From contig NC_134036.1 of NCBI RefSeq assembly GCF_964204645.1, positions 10,519,859 through 10,583,858 on the forward strand: a DNA stretch of 64,000 bases. Direction: 5' to 3'. Origin of the DNA: Tubulanus polymorphus (taxonomy: Eukaryota; Animalia; Nemertea). A program made the position numbers and the translations under genes. Shown piece after piece: positions 13,907-60,629 of the stretch (position 1 is the first letter of the stretch; every line of letters begins with the position of its first letter). The notes under the pieces are model-generated. The model worked only from the letters and a program-made list of their open reading frames with translations, did not search any database and was not told where the DNA came from.

Positions 13907-13917
13907 CTGAGCTACTT

Positions 13918-14190
13918 AGAGCGAGCGGGAGGGATTAAACCCGAACATAACTCTATGGTTAGTACCATAGAGTTGCTCAATTCCCATTCACTTCTCTACT
14001 GCCAGAAATACATATAGACAGACGGACAGACGGCACACTGTAAACATTAAAATATAAAATAATCCGACGGTAGAGCGAGCGGGAGGGATTAAACCCGAAC
14101 ATAACCCTATGGTTAGTACCATAGAGTTGCCCAATTCCCATCCACTACTCTACTGCCAGAAATACATATAGACAGACAGACAGACAGCCG
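13918..14190 (-). repeat. Two copies of the homologous hairpin unit, 3' of the other RAG-like transposase
   Basis: Reverse complement CAGTAGAGTAGTGGATGGGAATTGGGCAACTCTATGGTACTAACCATAG(A/G)GTT...TCCCTCCCGCTCGCTCT. Confidence 0.9.
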
Positions 14191-14239: not shown

Positions 14240-17010
14240 ATAATTTACAAGAACTTGTGTCTCCATTTTTTTTTAGAAGCCTCCACAAAAACATTTTCGT
14301 GTAACGCGGACATCGGTTTTGGACTTAGTACTATACAAACCCTGGTTGATAAACATCAGTTTCGCTCGTGTCACTTTATTTCTCAAGCATGAATAAACGC
14401 GGACATCCCTATTCATGCTAGCGTGCTTGCTTTCCAAGCCTTGTTCCCCGAACATTCCTGGAGAACGCCAGATGTTGACAAATTTAGGCACATGAAAAAT
14501 TAACATAACCATTTTGGGTGTTATTGTTTGTTCCGGGAAAGTTCTTGGAAACCAAGCACCGAAATCCTTACATAAGGTTTCCAAATCTGCCACTTCTTCA
14601 TCTGATAAAAATCTACATGCAGAATACAGTTTGTACATTTGTGCGAACCGTAGAAATAATTCTTTGTATATGAGCTGGATGTCTGGATGATCTGATGGTA
14701 CAGATAGTAGTTAAACCGCGTTGTTTATTCCTTTTTCGGGATTTACACTCAACAGCTAGTTGATATGATTACCATTGAACGAAAGAGAATGGTATGCTTG
14801 TCTGTCTATTCCAATTTCATGGAATTTTTCATTGAGCGCTGACTGTAGTGGACCCATTTTACATTTGTCTTCGACCATATCATAGATTTTTAGTCCGACA
14901 CCTAATGTAATGTGAAGAAGAGGTGGTACCAGGTGTTCTAAATCAAGTGGCCTATACAGCATAGGGCCACAAATACTGTGCGACGACGGGCCAATCATGG
15001 TTGGTGCCGCCTCGATTAATTTAGAACTTTCGATATAGTGGTTAATACTACGGTTTTGATAAGTGTTCGCAGAATGAGACGTGCCATCTTTTTTTCTCAG
15101 ATCTTCAAGAGGCACCATGCACTTAAGACATGGATAAGATGCTGTTGAGCCCTGATGACCCATCATTGTACTATGATATGCAAGATCCCCAATGAAAAAA
15201 GTTCGAGCTTGTATTGTTTTTTCATCTAGAATAATTGTAAATGGGGTTTCCAATGCCTCTTTTAATGGCCCAAAAATCATCTTCAAGTTTTCAGCATTAT
15301 CAGTTGCTTCAAAATAACCGACCAATTCACAACTATCGGGGCTATTGGCAGACAGTCCATTGACTATCGAGAAAACCATTTTTGTACTCCGACCCCCCTC
15401 ATCAATTCCTGTCTTAATCCATATTTCATCGTAAAAGTTTGGATGGAATTGGAGATTTCCAATTTCGTGCAGATGTTTTGCATGCCTCTGAGCTTGTGCA
15501 TGAAAACCATCTATGATTACATAGGGCGCAAGTTTTCTTTCGTGAGTACGGGAATTAATCTCTAGGATTTCTTCACCCGCAATAACGTAAAGGGCAAATG
15601 ACATTTCTGTTTTTTATTTCAGTTTTTAGTTTTTCAGAATTTCTGCCACAGTTGGAAATACAGGAATGTCAAAGTTTTTTAAATCTCTCTTCAAATCAAG
15701 AAGACGAATCATTGGCATTCGTTGCCTCAACTTAATGTCGGGGTGAGCATGTGGAACAGTTTGATATCGTCTTCACGTAAGGCTGCATTCGTTAACCGTG
15801 GGATAACTTTTGAAAAATTTTGCGAGTGTACAAGCAGAATCTTGGATATTACTTTCTGATGATGATATTCCTTCAACAAAATCTTTCAATTTATCGGGGC
15901 GACTATTAAGCATGTTTCTTGATGCCGACACTGACGGGGTACGGATTACTGGTCCATTTGATTTTAATTGACATTGTAACGAAGAAATAGTTATATTTTG
16001 CTGATTGATTTTTTTGTCTTTTTCTGTTATTTGATTTCTCAAAGTTGAAACTTCATTTTCCAATTCAATGATTCTTGTTGAGTCAGACTTTTGCCAGAAA
16101 TTTGATTCTTCGTCAGTTGTAATGCTTATAGTATCTAAGCATGGGTCTGCTAAAGTTGACTCATCTTTATGGGGTGGAGAATTTATGAACTCCAGTTTTT
16201 TCTTACCTAGGCAAATTGAAGTTGAAGATGAGTAAGAGTGAAGAAGATAAGAGGCAAAAACAATTCGTAATTCCAGTGTAATTGACCAATAATTGAATGT
16301 ATTTTAATTACATTACTATTAAGTGCAAGTTTTTCTATATCTTATTATATCTCAGTGAAATAAATCGTCATAATTGATAAAATTCAGTACATGTATGACA
16401 TTCGTTACTAATCATTTGAAGCTTGATCTGTACAATTTTATTCGAGTTCATTTCTACTCCAGGGCTGGGTTTCAGAGATGTAGAAGCAAAATAGTTTCGA
16501 AAATTTAGAATTTAGAAATTTGCCGATTGAGGATTTACCCTAGGGGTACTCAGTCTATGAATCCGGGCCCAGGATATTCAAAGTTTTATTTATATAATCT
16601 ATTTTCCCCAAAAAATATCACTACGTGACTACATCCCCAAGGCAATATGGATTTTCTAATCCCTTAAATTATGACCTCACCCTGGATTCCCATGAACTGA
16701 AATGTATTGACATGTATCTTTTTATAAGAGTAGCTTTCTGGATTGAATAACAAATTCAAGGTTACTGAAAATCTAGAACTTACTAATGCATGATCACTCA
16801 TGTGTGAAACACGAACCAGAAACCATTCGAAGAAATAAAATGCAGTGAATGAATTAAAGAACAATGAATATCAATATCTTTAGGAATTCTTTATTAGTAT
16901 TAAAAAGCAAACGAGAGTTTTTCATGAAATGTAGACTCACAATTTCTTCTTTTTTGGCCGAAACGTCGTTTTTTCCCACCGGCGCCAACTTTTGAACCGA
17001 GCGACCCCCC
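14240..17010 (-). pseudogene. Second, diverged RAG1-core/Transib-like transposase (frameshifted, no PHD insert)
   Basis: KTGIDEGG, FIGD, YPCLKC, PLLHITLGVG, FNGNH, ITPKM....H, GMFGEQGLESKH; upstream exon ~16940-17010 (GSKVGAGGKKRRFG) resembles exon 1 of the other copy. Confidence 0.85.
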
Positions 17011-17995: not shown

Positions 17996-19195
17996 GATAC
18001 CGGAAAAACCTACGTATTAGACATGTTAGTGGCCTGGCCTAGATTATTTGAAAGAATAATACTTGCCCAATGAGTGACACAGATCTTAAGGCCTTTTGGT
18101 ATGACGGTCGATCCGGAAAGTGAAGAAGTGTTGGCTTGTAGAACAGGTAAATAGCCTAATGCGATGCGTTTGCATTTCGTGTGGCCTAGCCTGGGCCTAC
18201 GCTACAGCCGAGTCGGGTTTTGAGCTCCACTTGTTCTCCCATCATCGATAGGGAAGACCGACGTTTTATACATCAAAATAAAGCTAAAGCTCATATAGTT
18301 CATAGACAATAATTTTAAACGATCCATCGTACTATATTTTCAATATATAAAGAATCTTACCAAAGACTTGTATCGCCCGAGTCATTAAATTTTCTGTCTA
18401 TTTTGAAGCGGTCCGGCGGCAAAAGAGTCGAAGATAAATGGCGTTTAATACCCTTACGAACTAGTCTATATACTCAAGAAGCTGCTACAGGGGATTGCAT
18501 CAAGTCAACTTCGTTCGTGTTTCACACTAAGGGAGCTAGGAAAAACCGTTAGATCGCGTACTTAAGCATTTGGAGCATAGGCGCGATGGTCACGTGACCG
18601 CACCGTGGATCAATAATCGCTATTGACAATCAAAGCGAAACACCGTACAGCCGTGAAAGAGATATTAGAAGATAGAGGGGGTCATTCTGAATCCGAGGAT
18701 ATGCGACACGAGGGGGTAGACCCCAGGGCTTGGGCGCCGGGGACGCTCGAAAAAGTGCCTAAAATGACCGAACGCAATGATGCATGTTTAGGGGTCTAGA
18801 AAACCCCTTAAAAGCACGGAGACAACGACAGGATCCTATAGGCCGGTAAACAGGGCTATGGACCAGGGTCCTATTATATCGATTTTGGCCAAAGGTTGGA
18901 TCGCACCGATGTTGAGCGCTCTGAACACGGGCCCAAGGCATTAAAATTTCAAAGTTACGAGTGCGCATAAGCCAAAGAGACTCGGACGCTTAACCCTAGC
19001 GCCCGAAGGCCACTTTTAGGCCCTTGTAGCGTATGCTATAAGGGTTCAGTTAAACTGCTCACTAGTTTTGCATTGGGCACCAAAGGATGGCCAACAAAGG
19101 GCTGGAGACGAATAGTCTGTACGACCTCCTGAAGCTTAAGCTCGAAGGTTTGAAAATGGAACAATGCTCTTAAAACATGTCGTTAGATAGAGATA

Positions 19196-37643: not shown

Positions 37644-37667
37644 ATAATTAATTTTTTTGTTAAATAA

Positions 37668-38916: not shown

Positions 38917-40760
38917 AATTTTAACTTTAATAAAAATATATATAATAAATGGAAGGTAAAGTATATGAAAGAATCAAAGCTGATAAAGAAATAAATGATG
39001 ATTTGTATTATGTAATACCTTATAAAAGAATAAATGAATATATTGGAACATTTTTATTAAATGAATTAAATCAATACAAAGAATATTTAATTGAACGTAA
39101 TAATAATATTGAAACAAAAATAGAAGATAATATTGAAACAAAAATAGATAATAATATTGAAACAAAAATAGAAGATAATATTGAAACAAAAATAGAAGAT
39201 AATGTTATACCTTCTACATCGAATGATGATAAGATTGAAACAAAAATAGAACATAATATTGAACCTAAAATAGAAAAATCAAATGTTCAACCAAAAGATA
39301 ACATTAGATGTATGTATTGTGAAGAAGATTTTGATAATTATAATGATTATTTATTACACATCAAAAAAGATGAACATATTTTACAATTAGTAAAAACATA
39401 TGCCAATATATATAAAGATAAATGTAAAGAGGATCAGAATTATTGTGCTTTCTGTAATGAATGTATAACAAAGGCTAATTGGGAAGATATTATATTTGAG
39501 ATAACATTTGCTCCTGTAAATGAAATTGTATTATCTAGCGTTAATAAAGATATGAGTTATAAATTATCGAATATATGTTTAGAATATGATACAGTAACTG
39601 ATGAAAATATTGCTAGAACAATTCAAACTCAATACAATCAAGGGTTTTCATTATTATATGATTATATTGATAAATTTAAAACTGTAACTATTAATGCAAA
39701 TGATGAAATAATTAATGAGAATATTAACTTTCCTAGAAGATCTATTAAAGGTATATTAATATTTTTTACTATTGGAACGTATACTAATGGCGCAATAAAT
39801 GTTGACAATTATTATAATCCTGAAATAACAAAAGTAGAAATAACTATCGAAGGAATAGCAAATAAAATATTTTGTCAAGGAATGAGAATGATAGATCAAT
39901 GGGTAGAAATTAAAAAACATTTTATGAATGAAAAAGTAAAATCATTTGAAAATTGTAACATTAATCAAATTGACTATTATACCGGTAATAAATTTGCATT
40001 ATGGTTAGATTTTAGAACAACAGAAGATAATTCATTACATGGTTCTGGAAAAAAAACTACAGAACACTAAAGATGGAATACAATTATTCATGAAAAAGAA
40101 TAAGGGAATCAAAAATTTTAAAATGCACATTTATATTATATCTGACGCGCAATTAAATATTGTAAATTCACAATTAGATAGTGTTATGTATTAAAATTTT
40201 AACTTTAATAAAAATATATATAATAAATGGAAGGTAAAGTATATGAAAGAATCAAAGCTGATAAAGAAATAAATGATGATTTGTATTATGTAATACCTTA
40301 TAAAAGAATAAATGAATATATTGGAACATTTTTATTAAATGAATTAAATCAATACAAAGAATATTTAATTGAACGTAATAATAATATTGAAACAAAAATA
40401 GAAGATAATATTGAAACAAAAATAGATAATAATATTGAAACAAAAATAGAAGATAATATTGAAACAAAAATAGAAGATAATGTTATACCTTCTACATCGA
40501 ATGATGATAAGATTGAAACAAAAATAGAACATAATATTGAACCTAAAATAGAAAAATCAAATGTTCAACCAAAAGATAACATTAGATGTATGTATTGTGA
40601 AGAAGATTTTGATAATTATAATGATTATTTATTACACATCAAAAAAGATGAACATATTTTACAATTAGTAAAAACATATGCCAATATATATAAAGATAAA
40701 TGTAAAGAGGATCAGAATTATTGTGCTTTCTGTAATGAATGTATAACAAAGGCTAATTGG
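38205..40760 (+). repeat. 1278-bp direct tandem duplication (38205-39482 / 39483-40760)
   Basis: Copies essentially identical (one substitution seen near 38878/40156); junction GGCTAATTGG|GAAGATATT. Confidence 0.95.
38949..40070 (+). CDS. Chimeric ORF made by the duplication: zinc-finger protein N-terminus fused in frame to the MCP C-terminal half
   Basis: Translation switches from ...CITKANW to EDIIFEITFAP... at the junction. Confidence 0.85.
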   Translation: MEGKVYERIKADKEINDDLYYVIPYKRINEYIGTFLLNELNQYKEYLIERNNNIETKIEDNIETKIDNNIETKIEDNIETKIEDNVIPSTSNDDKIETKIEHNIEPKIEKSNVQPKDNIRCMYCEEDFDNYNDYLLHIKKDEHILQLVKTYANIYKDKCKEDQNYCAFCNECITKANWEDIIFEITFAPVNEIVLSSVNKDMSYKLSNICLEYDTVTDENIARTIQTQYNQGFSLLYDYIDKFKTVTINANDEIINENINFPRRSIKGILIFFTIGTYTNGAINVDNYYNPEITKVEITIEGIANKIFCQGMRMIDQWVEIKKHFMNEKVKSFENCNINQIDYYTGNKFALWLDFRTTEDNSLHGSGKKTTEH

Positions 40761-41285
40761 GCAAAACATTATAAATTAAAAACAAAAGGTGGAAATGATT
40801 CAGCCCATGCAATACAAGTATTTAAATCTTGGTGTGAAAAATGTAAAGAATATGTAATATATGATAAACAATTGAATCATAAATACTCAATTAAACATAT
40901 TGGTACAGATAATGTAATAGAAGATCCAACAGTTATAAATCCAAAATTTAATGATAATAATATATTAGATTATCGGTGGTATAGAAAAACATTTATAGAT
41001 TATTTCTCGAGTGATGATATAGTTACCATATTGAAAAAGTTAGATAACTTTAAACCAAATGTAAGTTATGCAATGAACTTATTTGAACTTAAATATGATG
41101 ATTTTAGAGAATTTTTAAATAAACATCCATCTAAAACTGAAATCGAAAATTATATTCCAAAAATATTTTCAAGAAAAACATTCAATAAATATAAATTTAG
41201 AAATCATTCAGGAATTATAACAATGAAAATGAAAAGGGATATATATTTAGAATACAATAAGCTTAAAGAAAAATATGAAAATTAA
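40227..41285 (+). CDS. Zinc-finger protein (352 aa) with IETKIEDN repeats
   Basis: CxxC...H..H motifs (CMYC, CAFC, CEKC); 24-bp tandem repeats. Confidence 0.8.
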   Translation: MEGKVYERIKADKEINDDLYYVIPYKRINEYIGTFLLNELNQYKEYLIERNNNIETKIEDNIETKIDNNIETKIEDNIETKIEDNVIPSTSNDDKIETKIEHNIEPKIEKSNVQPKDNIRCMYCEEDFDNYNDYLLHIKKDEHILQLVKTYANIYKDKCKEDQNYCAFCNECITKANWAKHYKLKTKGGNDSAHAIQVFKSWCEKCKEYVIYDKQLNHKYSIKHIGTDNVIEDPTVINPKFNDNNILDYRWYRKTFIDYFSSDDIVTILKKLDNFKPNVSYAMNLFELKYDDFREFLNKHPSKTEIENYIPKIFSRKTFNKYKFRNHSGIITMKMKRDIYLEYNKLKEKYEN

Positions 41286-41297
41286 AATTAAAAAGAT

Positions 41298-41793
41298 TAT
41301 ATAATTGACTGTATATTGATGGATGAATGGATGAGTTGGAAGAGTTGGATGAATTGGATGAGTGGAAGAGTGAATGAGTATAATAATATATATATTTTAC
41401 TTTTTAACACATAAATTGGAAGAATAGTATGAGTATAAATATAATATTTTTATTCTTTATTAAATTTAACACAATATATATTTATTATTATATGACATTT
41501 ATTATCTGTCATTTTATTATTTTATAAAAATATATTTATTATTTATCATTTTATTATTTATTATTTTATGAAAATATATTTATTATTATATGACATTTAT
41601 TATCTGTCATTTTATTATTTTATAAAAATATATTTATTATTATATGACATCTTCAAATCAAACTCTTACTGTTTTAAAAATTAAAAACATATGTAAATTA
41701 TATATTATTACACTCTTCCATTCATCCACTCTTCCAATTCATCCAATTCATCCAATTCATCCATTCATCCATCAATATACAGTCAATTATATA
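41298..41793. repeat. Inverted repeat with GGATGA/TCATCC sub-repeats between the convergent gene blocks
   Basis: TATATAATTGACTGTATATTGATGGATGAATGGATGA at 41298 and its reverse complement ending at 41793; AT-rich direct repeats in between. Confidence 0.85.
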
Positions 41794-41806
41794 GGTATAC
41801 AAATAG

Positions 41807-42418
41807 TTATTTTATGAATTTATATTCATATGGAAATTGTAATCTCATTAATAATTTTGAACCTTTATTATTTTTTAATTTATTCATATATTCATCATGT
41901 AATTCAGTAGGTATAATTTGATTTTCTTCTAATGATTGTTGCATAGATTTTCTATCTTTGTTGTAGAATAAAACTAGAAATCTTATATTCTCCCTAAAGT
42001 CTTTAACAATTGAATTATATTTCTGATTTAAAACCCATGTTGTTATCCCAAAATGTCTTCCAGAGAAAGCTAAATAACATAACTCACTTTCTCTAATTTT
42101 AGAATCATGTAAATTTGCGCAATCATCAATAATAAATAATGTATTTGATCCTTTATAAATATCTAATACAATTTTTATACAATTATCTAAATTTTCTTTT
42201 ACTGTTTTAGGGTCTAATATAATAAACATTTTTATTTTAACTATATCTCTAATATATGTTTTATTCATTTCATATGTAGGACAGAATAATATTATATTAT
42301 CAAAATGATTTTTATAAATAGTTTCTAACAAATCTAATATGAAATGTGTTTTACCACAATTTGTAACTCCAGTAACTAACATATTATGTGGTTCAAATAT
42401 AAATAAATCTTTATTCAT
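41807..42418 (-). CDS. A32/FtsK-like genome packaging ATPase
   Basis: Walker A GVTNCGKT, Walker B FIIDD, GRHFGIT..LNQ motif. Confidence 0.92.
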   Translation of the reverse strand: MNKDLFIFEPHNMLVTGVTNCGKTHFILDLLETIYKNHFDNIILFCPTYEMNKTYIRDIVKIKMFIILDPKTVKENLDNCIKIVLDIYKGSNTLFIIDDCANLHDSKIRESELCYLAFSGRHFGITTWVLNQKYNSIVKDFRENIRFLVLFYNKDRKSMQQSLEENQIIPTELHDEYMNKLKNNKGSKLLMRLQFPYEYKFIK

Positions 42419-43498
42419 TTATTCTTTTAATTTTACTAGATAAAATCCATTCATTAAATTTATCATCATATCCTTTATATTTCACCAAAGAATACTTTTT
42501 TCCTTTAAGAGTTTTTGTTTTCAATACTTTTTCTATTTTGTATTCTATTTCATCTGGATTTGGTACTAATGATAATTCTTGTTCATAAAAATAACCTAAT
42601 ATTTCTTCATCTTTTAAATCAAACAATTTATAAACAAATGGTTTAGTTAATATTATCTTTTTAATTTTAAATATTTCTTCTGTAAAATTAGGGGTATAAC
42701 CTTTATAAAATGTTTTTCGATATTTAGAAATTCTAACGTGTTGTCCTATTTTAAATTTAGGTTCTCCAAAATCATGTGTAACAAATGCTCCATATAAATT
42801 ATTCCAAACTATTTCTGAATTTTCTTCTTTTCTAGCTTCTATAGGTTTCATATTTATAGAACTATGTTTAGAATTATTATAACCTTTAACTAAATCATCT
42901 AATACATTGATATATTTATATGTTTCATTAGCGGTGAAATATTTCCACATTCTAGTTTTCAATGTTTTATTAAATCTTTCTATAACAGATGCTTTTTATC
43001 TGAATGTGTTGAAAAATATTCTACTTCGTTATCAGATAATAGTTTTTTAAAATGTTTGTTATAAAATTCTTTACCTTCATCAAATTGTATCTTATCTGGA
43101 ATAGCTTCTTTAAATATAGATTTAAAAGCATTTGTTACTTCTATTCCAGTTTTATTTTTAATCGGGATACTCCATGCGTATCGACTGAATATATCTATAA
43201 CATTCAGTATCCAGAAATATCCTTTGTTGTATTCTTCTAAGTTTTTCATATCAATTAAATCAGCTTGCCATTGTTGGTCAATATATGAAACCATTACTTT
43301 TCTTGTTAAATATTTTTTATCCATCTTTTTATGAATTTGATATGTGGGTTGATTTTGTAACCATGATTTTAATTCACTATATTTTATATTGCTATTATCG
43401 GATTTAATTTTATTCCATAATTCTGAAACGTTAGAATATGAAACTTCACTTTCTGGGTTGTAATATAACTCTCTTAAATATTGTTCTTTTTTCATCAT
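42411..43498 (-). pseudogene. int: Retroviral-type (rve) integrase with C-terminal chromodomain; 1-bp deletion near 42993
   Basis: WQADLID, VIDIFSRYAW, QFDEGKEF; restoring one A gives KKASVIERFNKTLK; chromodomain YKIEKVL...LVKYKGY..KFNEW. Confidence 0.93.
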
Positions 43499-43501
43499 AT
43501 T

Positions 43502-43879
43502 TTAATCCATTAATAATATTTTAGATTTATTTTCATTTGATTTATTTTCTGTTATAATAGGTTTACTGTCTGTACACGGATAACTAAGTTTCCGATCATC
43601 ATTGGAATCATCTTTATCGTCAGATTTGAATTTTGATTTATATATTACACCAGATAATATAATAATTGTGATTAACCCAATTGTAATATATAAGTAATTA
43701 TTTCTTCCACTATTAGAAGAATTAGATGGATTATTATTTGAATCAATACCATCAGATTCATTTATATCAGATAATTTCTTTTTCTTAGCTTTTTTTAATT
43801 CTGATGATCTTTTACCTAATTCTCTTGCCCATTTAATTTGTTTCTCGGATCTAGGCTTTTTCTTAACTCCATCACTCAT
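43502..43879 (-). CDS. Basic protein with one TM helix (125 aa)
   Basis: KKKPRSEKQ basic N-terminus; YITIGLITIIILSGVIY. Confidence 0.7.
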   Translation of the reverse strand: MSDGVKKKPRSEKQIKWARELGKRSSELKKAKKKKLSDINESDGIDSNNNPSNSSNSGRNNYLYITIGLITIIILSGVIYKSKFKSDDKDDSNDDRKLSYPCTDSKPIITENKSNENKSKILLMD

Positions 43880-44477
43880 TTATTTTAGTTAATTTTTGTT
43901 CTGATTCATCTTCTGTTTCGACGTTTGGTTGTAGTACATCTGTTTCGTTCTTACCTGATTTATATTCCATAGGTTTGATGTTCGAAAATGTTATGACACC
44001 AGTAGAAATCAATGTCATAACCGATCCTAATTGGAATGAAGCATAACCGACCCATTTTTGTAATTCAGTCATAACTAAATAGTCATTTTTCAAATCATTA
44101 TATAATTTATTTTCATCATCAATTGGTATTAGCCGGTTACATAATTTTGAATAACATTTGATAATACCATCACTTATAGAGTCGTTTATTCTAGCTAATC
44201 TTGACTCTTCATAAATCTTAAAATATTTGATTACTTTTTCTTTGTTCATATTATCTAATTCTTGAAAAGTTATTGTTTTACCAATAAACTCTTTAGTTTT
44301 TCCACTCGCAATCAATAGTTCTAGATGATGCTTACAATATAAATAGTATTCATAATCAATATTACTATCAATTTTATTATCACATTTAGTTGCCACATTA
44401 TCATTATCATCTGTTAGACCTAAATCTTCCAAAGTTTTTTCAACTTTAATATTATTCTTATTCGATTTCTTAGACAT
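43872..44477 (-). CDS. Polinton hypothetical protein (201 aa)
   Basis: Intact ORF, TAAATG start, weakly hydrophobic C-terminal segment. Confidence 0.7.
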   Translation of the reverse strand: MSKKSNKNNIKVEKTLEDLGLTDDNDNVATKCDNKIDSNIDYEYYLYCKHHLELLIASGKTKEFIGKTITFQELDNMNKEKVIKYFKIYEESRLARINDSISDGIIKCYSKLCNRLIPIDDENKLYNDLKNDYLVMTELQKWVGYASFQLGSVMTLISTGVITFSNIKPMEYKSGKNETDVLQPNVETEDESEQKLTKINE

Positions 44478-44725
44478 TTATATTAGAGAAATTTAATAAG
44501 AATAGTATTATAAGTATTCTTCAAATAATACCAGTATCTCTTTAGATTAATACTAGCTAGTTAAAGTTAAAGAATTCTAGTATTAGTTATTGTTTTTTTT
44601 AGTATTTTTTATTTGTGATATAAAGTATTCTCTTTTGAAAAGAAAATATTAAAAATTAAAATAGAAATAATAGATAGTTGAAGGTATGTAATTTTTATTA
44701 TATTTTATTTGAGATATATTATTCT

Positions 44726-45403
44726 TTAACCACTCATTAAAGACTCAACGTATTGTTCATTATGTGTTGAGTTCCATAATTCAATAAATTTCTTTGCTTT
44801 TGTTAACTGTTCCAAATATAACTGTAAATCTAGTTTATTAGATTTGATTTGATTTTCTTTCTTTTCTAAAGGCCTTAGATTCTTCCAATTCCAAATAAGT
44901 TTTTTATTGTATTCATCATTCATGTTAAATTTAGATATTGGTAACACGTGATCAATGTGGTAATAATCCCCATAATTATCTATATTCATTTTATCATCGA
45001 ATTGATATATTATCCATGATTTAAAAAATTCATCTGAACAACCCAATATATTAGACAATGTAACTGAATGTGTTTCATTACTAAATAATTGTGATAATCT
45101 AGTATTTAAACATTGTTTCATTTTAAAATTAAAATCTGTTTGATACCTTTTCTTTCGATAATTATTTTGATACTCATTATAATATTCACGATGATCTTCT
45201 CGATAATCTGGATTATTTTCTTGCCATTGTTTGGTGTATAGTTTAGTACAAGTTTTACAACAATATTGAAAACCATCTTTGCTAATCTTACGCTTACTAA
45301 ATTCTGTTAATGATTTATCTAATTCACATTTAGAACATGTCTTCTGATATATATTTATTACAACATTATTGTTTATATTTATAGCTTGTGATTGTTCCTC
45401 CAT
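44726..45403 (-). CDS. HNH-family endonuclease with N-terminal C4 zinc ribbon
   Basis: KTCSKC...CKTC; YHIDHVLP...NWKNLRPL...NQIKSNK. Confidence 0.8.
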   Translation of the reverse strand: MEEQSQAININNNVVINIYQKTCSKCELDKSLTEFSKRKISKDGFQYCCKTCTKLYTKQWQENNPDYREDHREYYNEYQNNYRKKRYQTDFNFKMKQCLNTRLSQLFSNETHSVTLSNILGCSDEFFKSWIIYQFDDKMNIDNYGDYYHIDHVLPISKFNMNDEYNKKLIWNWKNLRPLEKKENQIKSNKLDLQLYLEQLTKAKKFIELWNSTHNEQYVESLMSG

Positions 45404-45539
45404 TTATAATATATATTTTTATTAAAATTGGTTAATATTTTAGAATCCTCTTCCATTTCTTCGATCAACGTCATCCTTTTTCATTCCTCGCTGCTTTTGA
45501 TAAGTTGTTTCGATTCCTTGATATCTAAATAATACCACT

Positions 45540-46015
45540 GGGCAAAACCGCGCATTCGTGCGCGCTTTTGCTTAATGCGCATGCGTTAATCATAATTATA
45601 TATTCATTCTGTAAATTCTGTAAAATAGAAACGACCGAACACAGAAAATATCAAAACGTGTTCACATTAGGTAAAACCGCGCATTCGTGCGCGCTTTTGA
45701 TCAATGCGCATGCGCTAATCATAATTATATATTCATTCTGTGAAATAGAAACAACTGAACATAGAAAATTCAAACACATATGCACTAGGCAAAACCGCTC
45801 TTATAGGAGCGCTTTTGCTTAATGCGCATGCGCTAATTATAATTATATTTACATAATGAATATATAATTATGTAAATAGAAACGACCGACATAAAATATC
45901 AAAACGTGTTCGCATTAGGCAAAACCGCTCTTATAGGAGCGCTTTTGCTTAATGCGCATGCGCTAATTATTATTATATATTCATTCTAGAAATAGAAACG
46001 ACCGAACATAAAAAT
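45540..46015. repeat. Four ~120-130-bp tandem repeats with GC-rich hairpins
   Basis: GG(C/T)AAAACCGC...GCGCTTTTG.TTAATGCGCATGCG units near 45541, 45670, 45788 and 45918. Confidence 0.9.
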
Positions 46016-46951
46016 TCATCAATCAGATTTACACAATACATTATACAAGTTGTTCGGCCGTTTCTTCCAATACATCATTTGATTTCTATAAATACAATTT
46101 ATAATTACAAACATTTTTTTCAATTGCTGGTAAATATTTAACTACATCAACAAATGTTAAACTTAATCATTGGAGTCTTAATGTTTTTGAAATTCTTATA
46201 TTTCTTCTTCGATCTTTTGGTGATTCTATTGGTTTGATATCCATTGTTGTTGATTCCTCAGGCAGAAAGAGTATCTTGAGTTTCTCTATCGCTTCTTGAT
46301 GTGTATGACGTTTTATTAACCTAAAAGATATTAGCGGTAACTCTAGCAATCTAAAAGATATTCTAAATACGCTTAAATATATCTAAAGGTTTCGTATTTA
46401 ATAGCCTTAATAACTACAACAAACAGTACTTACATTTAGATTTATAATTGTAAACTATAAACTCCTAATTTCGTTTCGAAAGATAGAATATCCTGAGCAC
46501 AATATTACAGCGTATATCCCGTCATCTAGTTCCTGCGCGCCTTTCTAGAATATTCTCTACACGTTTCTGATTATGACGCGTCATCTCTATTCAGAGTTCC
46601 AGCACAGTTTGTAATATTATGAGTCATAATGTCTCGTTGTTATAGTAACAACTGTAACAGCTGCGAATTTATAGATTTATTCTATGGCTCTGTATATTGA
46701 ATGTATATAGGCTCAAATAGAATCATGTTCTTGTATAAACATCTAGAATAAGCGTGTTGAGATTTGTAAATTATGAGATTTGTGATTCGCTACGTCCGCT
46801 GTATACACAACGTGTTGAAGTTGAAAAAAACAATAATAAAAGCATTTAGATTAATGAAATTAATTAACTCTTTACAATTGAAATATAAGCTGGTAACATA
46901 TGTTTACTAGAGCTAATACAACCAACTATATAGCTGAGTATTATCGGGTGT

Positions 46952-47125
46952 TTATAACGATTCAACATATTTTTCACCATGTGTTGAGTTCCTTAATTCG
47001 ATAAATGTCTTTGCTTTAACCAACTGGACTAAAAACAAATGTGTTATAGTTTTATTGTGTCTTGCTTTTTGAGACTTGTCTATATCGATATTACATGTTG
47101 GGCAGTAGTATTTATTTGCTTCCAT
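46952..47125 (-). CDS. 57-aa chimeric mini-ORF: PolB N-terminal finger plus an HNH-protein-like C-terminal tail
   Basis: Own translation MEANKYYCPTCNIDIDKSQKARHNKTITHLFLVQLVKAKTFIELRNSTHGEKYVESL*; tail resembles LYLEQLTKAKKFIELWNSTHNEQYVESL of ORF 44726-45403. Confidence 0.6.
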   Translation of the reverse strand: MEANKYYCPTCNIDIDKSQKARHNKTITHLFLVQLVKAKTFIELRNSTHGEKYVESL

Positions 47126-47615
47126 TTTAATACTATATTTTTTATTAAAATTGATTTTAGAAGTTCAATGATTTAAATGTTATTCATATATATGTGAATA
47201 TTTTAAGAGTAATAGGGGTTTAGTTGTTTCGGGTTAAAGGTTTAATGATCGAGCTCATTAAAAAACAAAATATTAAAAGTAATTAAAAAACTATAATATA
47301 TTTTCATAACCGCGTGTATTTCGGTTGAATAATAGAATAATTATTATCATTTGAATATATTTGATTATTTAAATTTGTGTATTGTAATTAAATCAATTGG
47401 TCGTGGAGCGGAGCGATAGCGAAGCGAAGCAACCAATTGATTTAATACAATATGCTTTTTATATTATTAATATCTTATAATAAATATTTAGTTTTGATAT
47501 AAAATGAACGCGGTTATGAAAATATATTATAGTTTTTTAATTACTTTTAATATTTTGTTTTTTAATGAGCTCGACCGTTCGACCTTTGATCTGAAACAAC
47601 TAAACCCCTATTACT
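47037..47615 (-). repeat. Right TIR of the Polinton (579 bp)
   Basis: Reverse complement of 27610-28188. Confidence 0.95.
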
Positions 47616-52419: not shown

Positions 52420-53330
52420 TCCCTGCCTGAAAGTATTAGACCGGCCAGTATAATGAGACAATATCTTCATATTTTAGGGTCGTGTTGTAGCTGATTGTCG
52501 CTGCTCGTGGATCCCGCCGTTTAATTTGCACCTGTGGTGCTCGCGGTAAGTTACACATTGCTCCCCCCCCCCTAAATATGTGGATCCATGCCTGAAAGTA
52601 TTAGACCGGCCAGTATAATGAGACAATATCTTCATATTTTAGGGTCGTGTCATAGACGATTGGTCTCTGTCCGTGGATCCAGCCATTTTTCTCGCACCTG
52701 TGGTGCTCGCTTTAAGTTTCACATTGCTCCTCTCCGTATATTATAAACAAAAACACATCTAATAAGATCTTTTTTTTAGGGTCAAATCGTCTGTTCAGTT
52801 GCTTTTCCTGAGGGTCCCGCTGTTTATGTAGCACTGTGGTGCTCGCGGTAAGTTTACACATTGCCCCCACCCTTAATATGTGGATTAAGCGCTTACATGC
52901 CTGATATTATAGGAATAAAAACACCTCTAACAAGACTGTTATTTGTTTTTTAGGGTCACTTCGCCTGTTCAGTCGCTGATCTCTTGGATCCTTTTCGTAT
53001 TCAGTCGATTATTTCTCATTTTTACCCTTATAACATGACAGTCTTTTCTTTTTAGAGTCAATTCATAGGCTTTGCTGTTAGCTCCGCGGATCCCGCCGTT
53101 TAATTTGCACCTGTGGTGCTCGCGGTAAGTTACACATTGCTCCCCCCCTAAATATGTGGATCCATGCCCGATAAGTATAAGACCGGCCAGTATAATGAGA
53201 CAATATCTTCATATTTTAGGGTCGTGTTGTAGCTGATTTGGTCGCTGCTCGTGGATCCCGTAGTTAATTTGGCACCTGTGGTGGTCGCGGTAAGATAAAC
53301 ATTGCTCCTCCTCCCTAAAAAATTTGCCTG
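52420..53330 (+). repeat. Tandem exon-intron-like repeat units upstream of the transposase
   Basis: Recurrent TTTTAG|GGTC...~68 nt...GCTCGCG|GTAAGT. Confidence 0.8.
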
Positions 53331-53527
53331 CAATGCACCGAAAACCAGTTTTTTATATCTTTTCAGGACCAGTTTTTGTCATGTAGATGTCTCCTTAAGA
53401 TCTTCAGATATCTATATCTATCAGACAACCAAAAGTAAGTAGCTTCGGCAATTATTTAGTGCGATACATGTATCAAGAATCACTTATGCAACTGCTTTCT
53501 AATCATTGTCATGTTTTCATTGTGTAG

Positions 53528-56500
53528 ATGGCTAGCACACCAACTATAGGCTCCAAGGGAAAATCAGGAAAAAGGAAATTGTATTTCGGTTCTCGGTCTA
53601 AGTCAGCAAAGTGCAAAGTTAAAGTGGCTAAAATGTTATCTGCACGTAAGTCTCTTATCAATTTATATTGTCAAGTTTGTTGAAAATAAACATAATTTTC
53701 TGTTACATTTATTGTTTTGAATTGTTAATTTAAGTAAGTCAAATTCGCTTAAGCTGGGACTATCACTAAATTGTCAATGACTATGCACGTACTAGAATTA
53801 AAAATACAAATATTGACAAAAAAAATAGTGACGACATTAGTAAGGTGACGACTTATATCCGATGACAACGAGTTTGACTGTACATTATTAATCAAATATG
53901 GCAAAATGAAGGTACAGGCCTAAATTGGTAAGTTAGTTCTGTATACTACACAAACGTTGATTTTAATTTCATTGAAAACAACACAAGTTCTGTCCATTCT
54001 GCCACAACTAAAGTGCCAATCTGTAAACATCAAGTATTTTTGATATATAACAATCATTGATTTAAATGAGATAAGAAGGAATGTATGTGATTCATGTTAT
54101 TTGTAATTGCTTTTCTTCATATGTAGCACTTTTCATTGTTAGGAAAAACATCGGTCGAACCTGAAACTGATATTTTAAACGAGGATACTACTAATACAAT
54201 TCCAGTTGCATCACTTGAGAGTCTTGCACCTATTTCCTTGGAGTCACCCACGTCTACAGATACTAAAGTAGAAATCCTTCACAAAATTATTCAGGAAAAA
54301 GACATTTTGATTGAAGAACTAAAAGTGAAGTTTTCACATATGGAACAAGAATTTATTAAATGTCAAGAGTTGTTAAAAGAGAGAGATAAAATCATAGAAC
54401 AAAAGGTTACAGAAAATGAGTTGTTAACATCAAATCTAGAAAAGGCAAATGAAAAGGTTTCATATTGTAAAAATTCAAATCTACTTAGAGTAGTCGATGG
54501 GTCAACGAAATCTACTTTTACAGCCGTATCATGTGCGACAGTACCTGCAAGGTTGACTACATACACTAGATTAGAATCTCCTGTTGTCAATTTATCGGTT
54601 GCTAGTCTTCGGACTCTCGAAGAGCGGGCATCTAAAATGAAATACATCGTAGACATTATTTCTTCAAAAGAAGGTCCTTGTATAAATGATAGTTCCTCAT
54701 CTGTTTGTCAGTTTTTATTGCAATATCCTGATTTAGCAAAAGCAGCCCTGCTTAAGTCGAATTTCATGTCTAAGATATTAACCCCTAGTCAATGTGTCGA
54801 TTTAAAACTACATCTCCGTCTTCCAACAAAACGACTTTTACGGATGAAAAGTATTCTTGATTCCATGGGGTTCCCTATTCTCGCGCCTGTTGCCCATATC
54901 CGTCAAGAACTGAATAACCGCAGTAAGGAACTTGTGCCCTATATTGAAGCAGGAGAAACTATTTTACAGGTAAATAGCGGAACGCATGAGAAGAAATTAG
55001 CACCCTTTGTTGTACTGAATGAACCAAAGAAGCAAATTGAAAGAGCTTGTATTCACTTGTCTGAAAACAATCGGCTGCATGATAATGATCAATTCACGAA
55101 TGAAATCTGGGTGAAAATCGGCGTAGACAAAGGTGGAAAAAGTACAAAGATGGTATTTTCCATCATTAATGGTCATTCTCCAAATAGCCCAGATTCAACC
55201 GATTTGTTAGTTTATTTTGAGGCAATAGACAGCCCTGAAAATCTTTAGATAGTCTTCGAAAAATTCCGTGATGAATTTGATACTATCTCCTATGTATCCA
55301 TAGAATTTAAGCAACACCCTGTACGCATCTTTTTCATCGGAGACATCCACTACTTATGTAGCATGATGGGGCATCAAGGCTGTTCAGCCTCATTCCCATG
55401 TCTCTGGTGTTACATAACACTCGATGACCTGCGTAACAAGAAAGGACTGCCTCATAGTCCAAAAAATGTCATTTATCCACTCCGTGACATAAACACATAC
55501 CTACATGACCTAAACGTGATGAATTCCAATGGATCAGCTGGACCACGGAGTCACAGCATAAATCGACCCATGCTTTTCCGACCATTGGACATTGCTCATT
55601 TAGTACCCCCACCCCTTCATATTTCCCCAGGAATTGGATTACAGATTTTTCAATTAGTTGAATAGCGTTGCCAAGAACTAGACAAAACAATCTTAAATGA
55701 GAGAGACCCACTCTTGTATGAACAATGGGCAAACATCTCAGAAAAAGTGTCTCAACCTGAAGACCAGCTAGCTGATCTTAATTCGAAATTAACTTCTTCG
55801 GTAAAACTCACAAAAATGCTATCTACTGCAATGAAAAAAGGTTCTAGTCCCTTAAACTGTTCAGCCGCTATATGTTTGACCAGAGTCATAGATGATCCAA
55901 AAGCGAGTCAATATGTGCACTGCACGAAGTGTGATGCGCCACATCATGAACAATGTATTCTTATTCACCAGGGCAGTAGTCATGCGTTTCACTGCCATCA
56001 ATGTACTACTGGCAAACGAATTTCACCGACTATGGTCATGAAATCTCAAACCAAAGTTCAGGATGATTTAAAATTTGATATCGAAGCCATTAAAATTCGT
56101 TTATTGCCTGCTCGATCATCTTTGAAGTCAATTCATTCAGAAATTCAATCAAATATGGGTCCTCTACAAAATGCACTCGATAACAAGTTACATGAAATTG
56201 GTATTGATCGACAGGCATATCATTCTAATAGTTTCATCGGTAACCATATTCAAAAGCTATTGAAAATTGATGACCACAGTAACAATCCCTCGAAGTTATT
56301 AAGTGTTTTGAATCAATTTCCACAAGAAAAAGCCAAATTACTTACGCTTTTCACAAAATTTAGCGAAATATATGCACTGTACACAGCATGCCGCTTTTTA
56401 TCTCAAGATGAGATCAACAGATTAGAACATCTTTGTCATGACTTTGGAGAATGGTTTCCGACAATGTTTACTGAGTCAACAATAACTCCAAAAATGCATA

Positions 56501-56799
56501 TCCTCGTATATCATGTTGCGGAGTTTGTTAAGACCTGGCAATCACTCGGGCTCTTTGGTGAACAAGGCCTTGAGAGCAAACATGCAATCATGAATGAAGA
56601 TTGTCGAACCTATAGCACTGTGCGCAATCAGGTTCTACGCACTAAACTCATGTTTGTCAATCAAGGTCTGTATTCCAGTAGAAACATTGTGTCCTTGCCA
56701 GTTACAGTGCGAAAGTGTAGTTGTGGTGGCTTTTTCCGTAAATCCCCTTCTAATGAAACAAGACGCTGTCAAGTATGTCTTAAAGATGAATCCATTTAG
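53528..56799 (+). pseudogene. RAG1-core/Transib-like DDE transposase with internal PHD finger; predicted exons 53528-53645 and 54143-56799; two in-frame TAG stops
   Basis: KIGVDKGG, PNS, FIGD, PCLWC, PLH..GIG, FIGNH, ITPKMH...H, GLFGEQGLES align with RAG1 core motifs; ORFs 54136, 55363 and 55714 share one frame; GT-AG junction keeps the frame. Confidence 0.85.
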
Positions 56800-56840
56800 A
56801 CCGCTGAAAAAGAAAAATATCTTGCGTCAATCACATAATT

Positions 56841-57895
56841 TGACAGTAGAGCAGTGGATGGGAAATGGGCAATTCTATGGTGACTGTGGAATTATGACAG
56901 GATAAAAATCGCTCCCGCTCACTACTGTCAGTTATATCCATCACGTAATATGTGTATATAAATGTAAACTGTCTCTCTTGTCTGTAAGTGGTATTGTCTG
57001 TCAGTAGAGCAGTGGATGGGAAATGGGCAATTCTATGGTAACTGTAGAATTATGACAGGATAAAAATCCCTCCCGCTCACTCTACTGTCAGTTATATCCA
57101 TCACGTAATATGTGTATATATATGTAAACTGTCTGTCTTATCTGTAAGTGGTATTGTCTGTCAGTAGAGCAGTGGATGGGAAATGGGCAATTCTATGGTA
57201 ACTGTAGAATTATGACAGGATAAAAATCCCTCCCGCTCACTCTACTGTCAGTTATATCCATCACGTAATATGTGTATGTAAACTGTCTGTCTTGTCTGTA
57301 AGTGGTATTGTCTGTCAGTAGAGCAGTGGATGGGAAATGGGCAATTCTATGGTAACTGTAGAATTATGACAGGATAAAAATCCCTCCCGCTCACTCTACT
57401 GTCAGTTATATCCATCACGTAATATGTGTATATATATGTAAACTGTCTGTCTCGTCTGCAAGTGGTATTGTCTGTCAGTAGAGCAGTGGATGGGAAATGG
57501 GCAATTCTATGGTAACTGTAGAATTATGACAGGATAAAATCCCTCCCGCTCACTCTACTGTCAGTTATATCCATCACGTAATATGTGTATATAAATGTAA
57601 ACTGTCTGTCTTGTCTGTAAGTGGTATTGTCTGTCAGTAGAGCAGTGGATGGGAAATGGGCAATTCTATGGTAACTGTAGAATTATGACAGGATAAAAAT
57701 CCCTCCCGCTCACTCTACTGTCAGTTATATCCATCACGTAATATATGTATATATATATGTAAACTGTCTGTCTTGTCTGTAAGTGGTATTGTCTGTCAGT
57801 AGAGCAGTGGATGGGAAATGGGCAATTCTATGGTAACTGTAGAATTATGACAGGATAAAATCCATCCCGCTCACTCTACTGTCAGTAATATCCAT
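56841..57895 (+). repeat. Seven-copy ~158-bp tandem array of a hairpin-forming unit, 3' of the transposase
   Basis: CAGTAGAGCAGTGGATGGGA...AATTCTATGG TAA CTGTAGAATT...TCCCTCCCGCTCACTCTACTG repeated 7 times. Confidence 0.95.
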
Positions 57896-57933
57896 CAAAA
57901 TATTCGTAAACTCCGCCTTATTGAGTATCATAA

Positions 57934-59000
57934 GGACTGCTGTAAATATTTCATTGAGAATTAAAGAACTTGGGCACATTTGGACTGTAAATATTTCATG
58001 GAGTTGACAGGCAGGGAACTTGGTAGCATTTGAACTGTCAATATTTCACTCAGTTGAGAATCAATATACTCGGGAGAGTTGAGACTGTTGTAAATATTTC
58101 ACTGATTTGACAGCCAGGGAACTCGGTGTCATTAGAACTGTCAATATTTCGCTGAGTTGAGAATCAATATACTCGGGAGGGTTGAGACTTGTTGTAAATA
58201 TTTCACTGATTTGACAGCCAGGGAACTCGGTAGCATGTCAATAGAAAACTGTCAATATTTCACTGAGTTGAGAATCAATATACTCGGGAGTGTTGAGACT
58301 GTTGTAAATATTTCACTGATTTGACAGCCAGGGAACTCAGTAGCATGTCAATAGAAAACTGTTAATATTTCACTGAGTTGAGGATCAATGAAGTTGGTAG
58401 TGTTGAGACTTGTAAATATTTCACCGAATTTGAGAGTCAGGGAACTCAGTAGTGTTGAGACTGCTGTAAATATTTCACCGAGTTGACAATCAGGGAAATC
58501 GGTAGTGTTGAGAGTGCTGTAAATATTTCACCGAGTTGAGAATCAGGGAACTCGGTAGCGTTGAGACTGCTGTAAATATTTCACCGAGTTGACAATCAGG
58601 GGTCAGTTGCACAGTCGTGACTTAAGTCAAAAAGTGGTCTTAAATCTTAAGACTGGTCTTAAGTTGTTAGATTGGCTATAGAACTAAGTTGGTCTTAGAC
58701 TGGTCTTAACTCTAAGCCATGACTATGTAACTGGTCTCCGGGAACTCGCTAGCATTTTGATTGCTGTAATTATTTCACCGAGTTGACAGTCAGGGAACTC
58801 AGTAGCGTTGAGACTGTTGTGAATATTTCACTAAGATGAGAATCAGTTAACTCGGTAGCATTTCGATTACTGTAAATATTTCACCGAGTTGACAATCAGG
58901 GAACTCGGTAGTGTTTTGACTTTTTAAATTTCATCGAGTTGACAATCAGGGAACTCGGTAGTATTTTGACCTTTTATATTTCAACGAGTTTACGATCGGG
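57934..59000. repeat. ~50-bp minisatellite
   Basis: GACTGCTGTAAATATTTCACCGAGTTGACAATCAGGGAACTCGGTAG variants in tandem. Confidence 0.9.
58599..58738. mobile_element. MITE (Harbinger-like TIR), copy 1, inserted in the minisatellite
   Basis: GGGGTCAGTTGCACAGTC...GACTATGTAACTGGTCTC; homologous to 63588-63726. Confidence 0.8.
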
Positions 59001-60629
59001 AAATAGAGAAGATTTTTCCGAATGATTTTTCAAATTCACCAATACTAGCTGTATTAAATAAGGAGGAATCTACTGTATATGTGTAAACTATCTGTCTGTG
59101 GCAATGACATTCACTCTACATTCAGTCCAGTTAGGCCTAAAGTCAAACTCGCTTAAATCGCCAAAGTCGGGGTACCGATTGTGATATCAGACTTCCAGGA
59201 ACTGCTACTAAATTAGATATGAAATTGGAATCATTTATAGTGATGACGAATTAAAAACGAGTTTGACTGTATATGTAAATTTACTTACTGGGTTCCTCTA
59301 GTCGACAGTGCATCGAAATTCCTGTGGTCCATCATTTATTCACTGTAGGCCTAAATGAAAATGAGACAAGATCATTTAGTTTTCAAACTTAGACGAATGA
59401 AATAAAGTTCAAAATCCATGAATATAAAATGTTCTCTTCATTGATTTACGTATTTGTTCTGGTGATACAGCATAGGATAGGACTTGGATTTATAATGTCT
59501 CAACACTTCATGAAAACTTCTAATACGAAACATAAGTTATGAACATATTGAGTCAAGACTAGATAGGCCTAATAAATTGGATTCCCGTCTATAGATTAGC
59601 CAAATAGTGAGCTGTTCAGGAAGACCCTTCAGCGTTGTTGAAAAATTCAAGTCCACTCCAAGGATGGTTGAACCAATGAAACTCCTTCTCCACCCCCCCC
59701 CCCCCCCCCGAGGACAGGTGGTCAGTGCCCAATGCATCAGCTTTATGTCCCGGTAGCCTACAGGCCTAGGCCTATATGAAGCTTATCATGTGACCACCGC
59801 TTGCTAGAATAGCCCAAGGTTCATTCCCTGACAGCTTTACTAACCTAAGGACAAGACAAGATGTGTGGTTAGGTAGGGACATGCAATCTGATCATGATGG
59901 TGGGTAGGCCTACCGCTCGCTGCTGATCACCAAATCAAATCAAATCATGAGTTCTTTAGCCTATTACTTGCCAACTATCGTCGCTTTCGCGAAGATAGAG
60001 TAATTGGATGTTCGTTTAACAATATGGCGTACCTTTTAAGACTTACCTTAATATTTTTCTCCTCTCTGACTGACGACGGCAAGTCAGACTAACAAATCTT
60101 GAATTGAATTGGTTCCACTGTCGGCTGATTTAGGCATAATAGCTTGCAAATCGAACCCATTTTAGGTACTATTAGGTACTAGTTTCCAAAGGTTAGAACC
60201 GAATATGCTGTCTGAAGATGGGTTTTGTACTCTTCGACATATAAAATGCCATTTATGACGCGATTTACTGCGCATTTACATTTTATGCGCAAAGAAGACG
60301 AACACGCACAATGCATTCAGCCATTTTGATAAAAAACAAGGGAATGATTGACGCAACCTATCAAGTTTATAATTAGATTTATTGTTAAGCATCTAATTCA
60401 ATTGTTACTTAAACTACTATCTCTTATTTTGCAAACCATTTTAATAAATGATGACGGTCATTTGAAAATCATCGCGAAATAGATTTTTAAACAAATTCAC
60501 GCGCTAGCCGCGAGTTCAAACGTTGTTGTTTTCTAGAGTATTATGACGTCATACGCATGAGTGCCGCTGATGCAAGTGCGCGATTTCAGGTTCAAGGTCG
60601 CTAAACACTGCGGCTCTGTACCTTCGTGA

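What the first reader, a model, noticed from the sequence alone, without database searches (positions are those of the whole stretch)
56841..57895. RAG-like transposase followed by an array of structured repeats: candidate transposase-plus-RNA-array system
Seen: about 40 bp after the stop codon begin seven ~158-bp units. Each has a ~90-nt nested fold-back (outer CAGTAGAG/CTCTACTG, middle GGGA/TCCC, inner 10-bp hairpin) and a TG/TA-rich linker. A homologous unit with compensatory changes follows the other transposase at 13918-14190. Inference: a conserved cis element or a processed small-RNA array belonging to this family (regulation, transposase binding or targeting). Linkers are nearly identical, so it is not a CRISPR-like memory.
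Basis: partly seen in the sequence, partly recalled or inferred. Interest (0 to 1): 0.82.

Follow-up and report, generated by a model that had tools for sequence, protein, structure and literature searches.

The report
Hairpin repeat cassette in Chapaev transposons
A dead copy of a RAG1-related (Chapaev) jumping gene in a ribbon worm carries, right after its transposase gene, seven tandem copies of a ~90-nt hairpin that selection has kept in several transposon lineages of this genome, most likely as a structured RNA, although nothing yet shows that it is transcribed.

Summary
Seven hairpin cores with a ~160-bp period start about 40 bp after the stop of a broken transposase. Two diverged units follow a second broken copy on the other strand. 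The genome is Tubulanus polymorphus, a ribbon worm. The gene is a Chapaev transposase: Pfam DUF1280, RAG1/Transib-like fold, CAC-type ends and 4-bp target duplications in intact relatives.

A covariance model finds the hairpin at 27 loci. Of these, 21 lie directly after a transposase C-terminus in sense orientation.

Transposase genes of different lineages are only ~60% identical in DNA, yet the two basal arms of the hairpin are 94-98% identical. Linkers and the apical stem drift, and the apical stem drifts with compensatory changes. Mismatches are almost all G-U on the sense strand. This points to a selected, strand-specific structure, most likely RNA in the 3' UTR.

The cassette varies from 2.6 to 13.6 units between near-identical copies. 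It was recently swapped between two lineages and is absent from two active sister lineages.

No transcript, small-RNA or cross-species evidence could be obtained. It is not a guide or memory array.

The scan had already noted this cassette on other DNA of the same genome (s1-492714).

The parts
54136..56799 (+). Broken Chapaev transposase frame (B copy). It is three in-frame pieces, 54136-55248, 55363-55665 and 55714-56799, separated by stop codons at 55246-55248 and 55663-55665.
   Evidence: ORF list and in-frame translation. Pfam DUF1280, E 3e-22. Homologs with open frames of 844-964 aa elsewhere in the genome.
56839..57897 (+). Hairpin array: seven ~90-nt fold-back cores and six ~70-nt TG/TA-rich linkers, period 154-161 bp. 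The first and last cores carry stem-breaking changes.
57960..57965 (+). First canonical poly(A)-type hexamer after the stop codon, about 60 nt beyond the array. The whole array would then lie in a 3' UTR.
   Evidence: Hexamer scan, (weak, inferred).
57985..59002 (+). Second, unrelated array (53/110-bp period) that follows the hairpin array in this element type only. It is split by a ~130-bp insert at about 58604-58735.
   Evidence: also present in the 97% relative L050.
14273..16063 (-). Broken transposase frame of the second copy (A), a decayed relative of the 844-aa lineage.
13911..14160 (-). Two diverged hairpin units of copy A (14063-14160 and 13911-14006). The second lacks the end of its 3' arm.
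18645..18655 (-). 5' terminal inverted repeat of copy A, an exact match to the terminus of the intact 844-aa elements.

Best explanation
The array is an optional internal cassette of Chapaev DNA transposons of Tubulanus polymorphus. It consists of n copies of an imperfect ~90-100-nt hairpin joined by fast-drifting linkers, and it sits 40-140 nt after the transposase stop in the sense orientation. Shown: the cassette travels with the transposon, its basal arms are under purifying selection, pairing is preserved by compensatory changes, and the pairing is better on the sense strand. Inferred: it acts as structured RNA in the 3' UTR of the transposase transcript and tunes that transcript after transcription. 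It could do so either as a Drosha/Dicer-type hairpin that yields small RNAs and cuts the mRNA, or as a repeated protein-binding stability or export element. Array length changes by slippage or unequal exchange, and whole arrays can be exchanged between transposon lineages. The copy in this window is a relic: its transposase is broken and its outer hairpins are damaged.
For: Linkage: 21 of 27 model hits lie directly downstream of a transposase C-terminus on the same strand. Selection: between lineages the last 1080 nt of the ORF are 59-63% identical (45-56% in protein), while the 49 arm positions are 94-98% identical, or 78-82% against the 935-aa lineage, and linkers are 63-88%. Within arrays, 4 of 90 core columns vary against 12 of 71 and 15 of 75 linker columns. 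Structure: 32 pairs, 97.4% of cells paired, 6 pairs with changes on both sides, reached by 0 of 500 shuffles; slid controls pair only 39-54%. The fold of the intact lineage is -51.3 kcal/mol, z -8.2. Strand: 97.4% canonical cells on the sense strand against 91.1% on the antisense strand. G-U occurs at 9 pair positions (49 cells), one of them fixed in all lineages. A-C occurs in 4 single cells, mostly in dead copies or at the outermost pairs. Position: in two of three types there is no poly(A)-type hexamer between the stop and the end of the array, and one follows 23-63 nt later.
Against: There is no transcript or small-RNA evidence. Searches of public protein-derived contigs gave no expressed fragment. 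Both strands fold almost equally well. The covariation rests on only about five lineages from one genome. The 844-aa type has ATTAAA inside every linker, and the 935-aa type has one before its hairpins. There is no Rfam match. Two active sister lineages do without the cassette. The 5' arm weakly resembles the transposon terminus, which fits a DNA-level role.
Confidence: 0.55

Rival explanations
1. DNA-level element. Each unit is a pair of inverted, terminus-like sites (pseudo-ends) bound by the transposase or a host protein, and the array acts as an internal enhancer or sink for transposition.
For: The reverse complement of the first 13 nt of the unit matches the 13-nt terminus of a sister lineage at 11/13 in the B unit (11 of 1000 shuffles) and at 10/13 in the other two types (about 6%). 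Repeated internal or subterminal binding sites are common in DNA transposons (general knowledge).
Against: The arrays lie 1.1-1.5 kb from the 3' end. No 9-mer of the core recurs near the termini. The asymmetry between the arms (a fixed wobble pair, fixed internal loops) is conserved, which a homodimer site does not require. The apical stem covaries without sequence conservation. The mismatch bias is strand-specific. Active lineages lack the array.
Confidence: 0.2
2. Neutral passenger. The array is a palindromic minisatellite that arose once in the 3' region, hitch-hikes with the transposon, and looks conserved because of concerted evolution and arm-to-arm templated repair.
For: Copy number differs widely between 99%-identical element copies. 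The 844-aa and 921-aa lineages share 95%-identical whole units while their flanks do not align, so exchange does happen. Transposon-borne tandem repeats are a known kind (PMC4079207, PMC3879986). An orphan array of ~27 units exists.
Against: Exchange gives uniform identity, yet between the B and 844-aa types the arms are 96% identical, the linkers 63%, and the apex has diverged. Templated palindrome correction should erase the fixed wobble pair and internal loops, which instead persist in all lineages.
Confidence: 0.15
3. Guide or targeting RNA array that serves the transposase, a transposase-plus-RNA system in the manner of omega-RNA/TnpB or CRISPR-associated transposons.
For: A structured repeat immediately 3' of the enzyme's gene is the layout of the omega-RNA of TnpB/Fanzor (PMC10055086, analogy only).
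Against: There is no variable segment: linkers are near-identical within arrays. The enzyme is a DDE-type RAG1-fold transposase with no RuvC-type nuclease. No extended complementarity of the hairpin to element bodies beyond shuffled controls, and no copies of the conserved 19-mer outside the arrays.
Confidence: 0.04
4. Self-cleaving ribozyme satellite, with multimeric transcripts cut into monomers.
For: A ~160-nt tandem unit with a conserved structured core resembles hammerhead-bearing satellites (general knowledge).
Against: No match to any Rfam ribozyme family even at E up to 1 on 7 kb. The hammerhead core motifs are not present on reading the unit.
Confidence: 0.03

Closest known systems
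Tandem repeats carried inside DNA transposons (Tetris foldback element of Drosophila virilis, PMC4079207; DTC84 repeat-containing MITEs of the clam Donax, PMC3879986)
   Same: A short array of ~150-170-bp units lies inside the element's boundaries. Unit number varies between copies. There is possible seeding of free arrays, here the orphan ~27-unit array.
   Different: Here the unit is an imperfect hairpin whose arms are better conserved than the transposase gene and whose stems covary. It sits at a fixed place and orientation after the stop codon of an autonomous element. It is shared by lineages with about 47% protein identity.
Clustered animal pri-miRNA hairpins, including hairpins in 3' UTRs whose cropping destabilises the host mRNA
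   Same: Tandem ~90-100-nt imperfect hairpins. Both arms are conserved and the apex is free to vary or be lost. The 935-aa type has a stem of about 34 nt per arm with an 8-nt loop.
   Different: No small-RNA data and no match to a known miRNA family. The 844-aa type is longer than a canonical substrate, with a 4-nt terminal loop. Seed positions differ between lineages.
Subterminal transposase-binding repeats of CACTA/En-Spm and related elements
   Same: Repeated short motifs in direct and inverted orientation inside a CAC-ended DNA transposon of a related group.
   Different: The array is not subterminal, its motif is not shared with the ends, and it is optional among close lineages.
Omega-RNA of TnpB/IscB/Fanzor elements
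   Same: A structured non-coding element encoded directly 3' of the element's enzyme.
   Different: There is no guide segment and no RNA-guided nuclease. It is a tandem array rather than a single scaffold.

Membership tests
Chapaev clade of the Transib/RAG1 transposon superfamily | Transposase matches the Chapaev family model (Pfam DUF1280) | tested here: met
   E 3e-22 for the window piece and 2e-24 for intact relatives. DUF1280 is equated with Chapaev in PMC3985635.
Chapaev clade of the Transib/RAG1 transposon superfamily | RAG1/Transib-like catalytic fold | tested here: met
   A profile of five lineages hits RAG1L 6b40_A at E 1e-3. All 43 Foldseek matches at E<=1e-3 are RAG1, RAG1L or Transib. 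The model is poor, however (mean pLDDT 51; TM by target 0.35-0.47).
Chapaev clade of the Transib/RAG1 transposon superfamily | CAC-starting terminal inverted repeats and a short target-site duplication | tested here: met
   Intact relatives have 11-12-bp ends starting CACGGCTGTAC and a 4-bp duplication at 8 of 8 insertions read. Copy A keeps its 5' end. The ends of copy B could not be found.
Chapaev clade of the Transib/RAG1 transposon superfamily | Intact DDE catalytic residues | not tested
   Residues were not mapped. The window copies are broken by stop codons in any case.
Animal miRNA cluster | Hairpin with a stem of about 35 bp, conserved arms and a variable apex | tested here: inconclusive
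   The arm/apex pattern is met. Stem length fits in the 935-aa type but is longer in the 844-aa type, and weaker in the B type.
Animal miRNA cluster | Small RNAs of about 22 nt from both arms with 2-nt 3' overhangs | not testable with these tools
   No small-RNA data are available here.
Animal miRNA cluster | Homology to a described miRNA family | tested here: not met
   No Rfam hit at E<=1.
Transposon-borne tandem repeat (Tetris/DTC84 kind) | Array inside element boundaries, with unit number variable among copies | tested here: met
   The array lies between the ORF and the 3' end. There are 2.7-12.7 units in the 844-aa lineage, 2.6-13.6 in the 921-aa lineage, and 6.6 against 2.6 in the B type.
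CRISPR-like or guide-RNA array | Unique spacers or a guide segment next to an RNA-guided nuclease | tested here: not met
   Linkers are near-identical. The enzyme is a DDE transposase.
Self-cleaving ribozyme satellite | Match to a ribozyme covariance model | tested here: not met
tRNA-derived SINE-like unit | tRNA-like fold or gene | tested here: not met
   ARAGORN and Rfam find nothing. An A-box-like stretch seen by eye is not matched by a conserved B box.

The most novel reading that the evidence does not exclude
A RAG1-superfamily transposon encodes its own polycistronic hairpin-RNA (miRNA-like) cluster in the 3' UTR of the transposase mRNA. The cluster is a dosage-tunable module that limits or protects transposase expression, and it is passed as a cassette between competing transposon lineages.
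Probability: 0.25. Interest if true: 0.8.

Novelty: new variant of a known kind. Interest (0 to 1): 0.55.

Why it matters
Tandem repeats inside DNA transposons are usually treated as junk that may seed satellites. In this case a non-coding module is conserved better than the transposase gene beside it. It keeps an imperfect, strand-biased structure and moves between transposon lineages. If it acts as RNA, it would be a rare example of a eukaryotic cut-and-paste transposon that carries its own post-transcriptional control element or small-RNA cluster. The transposon group concerned is the one related to the ancestor of the V(D)J recombinase. Because array length varies naturally, the genome offers a built-in dose series for testing this.

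Tried and rejected
1. Known RNA families: Rfam on the whole window at gathering scores and on 53000-60000 at E<=1 gave nothing, and ARAGORN gave nothing. Known RNA families, ribozymes and tRNA origin are dropped.

2. Free MITE or satellite: BLAST and the covariance model find the unit only in about 27 places, mostly beside the transposase. A linker-phased mini-element is not dispersed.

3. siRNA-like targets: there are no extra copies of the conserved 19-mer outside the arrays. Complementarity to element bodies does not exceed shuffled controls.

4. Shared motifs with the element ends: no common 9-mers. There is only a marginal 13-mer resemblance.

5. Other species: the nearest relatives outside this genome are echinoderm and unnamed metagenome proteins at 32-34% identity. 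Their downstream DNA has no model hit. An exact-motif scan of metagenome contigs gave only chance matches.

6. Transcript evidence: two word-index protein searches found no expressed fragment.

I did not try to read them by another route, so six model hits remain unread.

8. Ends of copy B: not found.

It was redone from files.

Full report
**The observation.**
The array is real. Tandem Repeats Finder reports 56844-57897 with period 160, 6.6 copies and 96% matches. A covariance model built later places seven hairpin cores between 56839 and 57886. The transposase frame ends at 56799, about 40 bp upstream. Two related units lie on the minus strand at 14063-14160 and 13911-14006, just after a second broken frame.

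**Organism and gene.**
The window is part of a 268-Mb assembly. Proteins of the same family are named Tubulanus polymorphus by NCBI. They sit on contigs of 14,301,023 and 11,548,486 bases, which are the lengths of contigs C10 and C12 here. The host is therefore this ribbon worm.

The frame before the array is three in-frame pieces broken by two stop codons. The pieces match Pfam DUF1280, which Majorek et al. equate with Chapaev transposases and place next to RAG1 (PMC3985635). Kapitonov and Koonin count Chapaev as a clade of the Transib superfamily (PMC4411706).

A profile of five lineages hits amphioxus RAG1L at E 1e-3. A low-confidence model (pLDDT 51) finds only RAG1, RAG1L and Transib among its 43 significant Foldseek matches. 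'RAG-like' is therefore fair at superfamily level.

**Element anatomy.**
The genome holds about 95 matches to the C-terminal piece. They include lineages with open frames of 844, 865, 921-923, 935 and 964 aa. Copies within a lineage are 99-99.9% identical, and the point where their similarity ends defines the element boundaries. The ends are 11-12 bp starting CACGGCTGTAC, and a 4-bp target duplication was seen at all eight insertions read. Elements are 4.9-6.9 kb with one long frame.

Copy A of the window keeps the exact 5' end at 18645-18655. It is a decayed relative of the 844-aa lineage. The ends of copy B could not be found.

**Linkage.**
BLAST with one unit finds arrays at 19 loci. The covariance model R1 finds 27 loci. 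Comparison with the transposase coordinates shows that 21 of them begin 45-190 bp after the C-terminal match, always on the same strand.

Six loci have no transposase beside them. One of these is an array of about 27 units with a ~215-bp period at C12:11097282-11102983.

**Selection and structure.**
Between the B, 844-aa and 921-aa lineages:
- The last 1080 nt of the ORF are 59-62% identical (46-48% in protein).
- The 49 positions of the two basal arms are 94-98% identical.
- The linkers are 63-88% identical.
- The apical part has diverged.

Against the 935-aa lineage, whose unit lacks the apical hairpin, the arms are still 78-82% identical. Identity this uneven within one unit cannot come from recent transfer alone.

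Within arrays of the two intact lineages, 4 of 90 core columns vary, all in the apical part. In the linkers 12 of 71 and 15 of 75 columns vary. The linkers are rich in a 4-nt microrepeat, which inflates their rate.

On 23 distinct units the consensus fold has 32 pairs, and 97.4% of cells are paired. Six pairs show changes on both sides, a count that 0 of 500 shuffles reach. Slid controls pair only 39-54%. Three of the double changes lie in the outer stems of the 935-aa type. The others are in the apical stem, including one series from C-G through U-G to U-A.

**Strand.**
Counted on the same pairs, 97.4% of cells are canonical on the sense strand and 91.1% on the antisense strand. G-U occurs at nine pair positions, one of them fixed in every lineage. 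The opposite kind of mismatch (A-C) occurs in four single cells, mostly in dead copies or at the outermost pairs. The two arms also differ from each other at fixed internal loops.

These features fit a single-stranded sense molecule better than a double-stranded protein site. The number of independent events is small, roughly 9 to 11 against 4.

**Dynamics.**
Unit number ranges from 2.7 to 12.7 in the 844-aa lineage and from 2.6 to 13.6 in the 921-aa lineage. It is 6.6 here against 2.6 in the 97% relative L050.

The 844-aa and 921-aa arrays are 95% identical over whole units. Their homology starts at the first hairpin and stops at the last, and the flanking DNA does not align. A whole array was therefore exchanged recently.

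On a protein tree the T. polymorphus lineages form one clade. Array-bearing and array-less lineages are interleaved within it. The 964-aa and 865-aa lineages have copies 99.5-99.9% identical and no unit. The cassette is thus dispensable for transposition.

**Mechanism.**
I rank a sense-strand RNA role first, at about 0.55. The element lies directly after the stop. In two of three types the first poly(A)-type hexamer comes 23-63 nt after the last hairpin. The structure shows RNA-like constraints.

Within this reading, two functions remain open:
- A Drosha/Dicer-type substrate. This fits the conserved arms and the free apex, and the 935-aa unit has pri-miRNA dimensions.
- A repeated protein-binding element for stability or export of an apparently intronless message.

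A DNA-level pseudo-end or binding site comes second, at about 0.2. Its only support is an 11/13 and 10/13 resemblance of the 5' arm to a transposon terminus. A neutral palindromic minisatellite is third, at about 0.15. A guide-RNA or memory role and a ribozyme are unlikely.

**Comparison and limits.**
Tandem repeats inside DNA transposons are known, for example Tetris (PMC4079207) and DTC84 (PMC3879986). I found no paper describing a conserved hairpin cassette behind a Chapaev or Transib transposase. That search covers open-access text only.

The nearest relatives outside this genome are at 32-34% identity (brittle star, feather star, unnamed metagenome eukaryotes) and show no model hit downstream. 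Motif scans of metagenome contigs gave only chance matches. All evidence therefore comes from one genome and about five lineages. Nothing shows transcription.

An earlier follow-up of this scan reached the same reading on another stretch of this chromosome (s1-492714). My tests were made independently on this window and on other copies. They add the strand bias, the arm/linker/ORF contrast, the interleaving on the tree, the orphan arrays and the terminus resemblance.

Noticed in passing
window 28000-47200: AT-rich block (GC 0.21-0.24, strong GC and AT skew that flips near 42000), which other notes call a Polinton. A 3.2-kb stretch (28008-31208) is 95% identical to DNA that directly follows the B-type relative in L050 (6794-10000).
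   Followed up: no
window 57985-58601 and 58740-59002: A second array with a 53/110-bp period follows the hairpin array in the B-type element and in L050. It is split by a ~130-bp insert whose left edge reads like a CAC-type terminus (58609-58619).
   Followed up: partly
G000:C12:11097282-11102983: Orphan array of about 27 hairpin units with a ~215-bp period and no transposase match beside it. It may be a transposon-borne unit turning into a satellite.
   Followed up: partly
window 56841-56853 and each later unit start: The reverse complement of the first 13 nt of the unit matches the 13-nt 5' terminus of the array-less 964-aa lineage at 11 of 13 positions (11 of 1000 shuffles).
   Followed up: partly
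window 17123-17848: A 168-bp tandem repeat (4.2 copies) in the 5' non-coding part of copy A. The matching region of intact 844-aa elements holds fewer copies.
   Followed up: no
L058:10045-10154: In a brittle-star (Amphiura filiformis) Chapaev locus, a single ~100-nt near-perfect hairpin (-39 kcal/mol) lies about 200 bp after the gene end, followed by a 19-bp x 38 array. It is unrelated in sequence to the ribbon-worm unit.
   Followed up: partly
L039:6431-6530: The array-less 964-aa lineage has a single GC-rich structured stretch about 460-560 nt after its stop (-43.9 kcal/mol, z -5.3).
   Followed up: no
G000:C8:6786180-6796943: Five transposase C-terminal matches (33-34% identity) spaced about 2.2 kb apart on one strand, which looks like a tandem array of a diverged fragment.
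   Followed up: no
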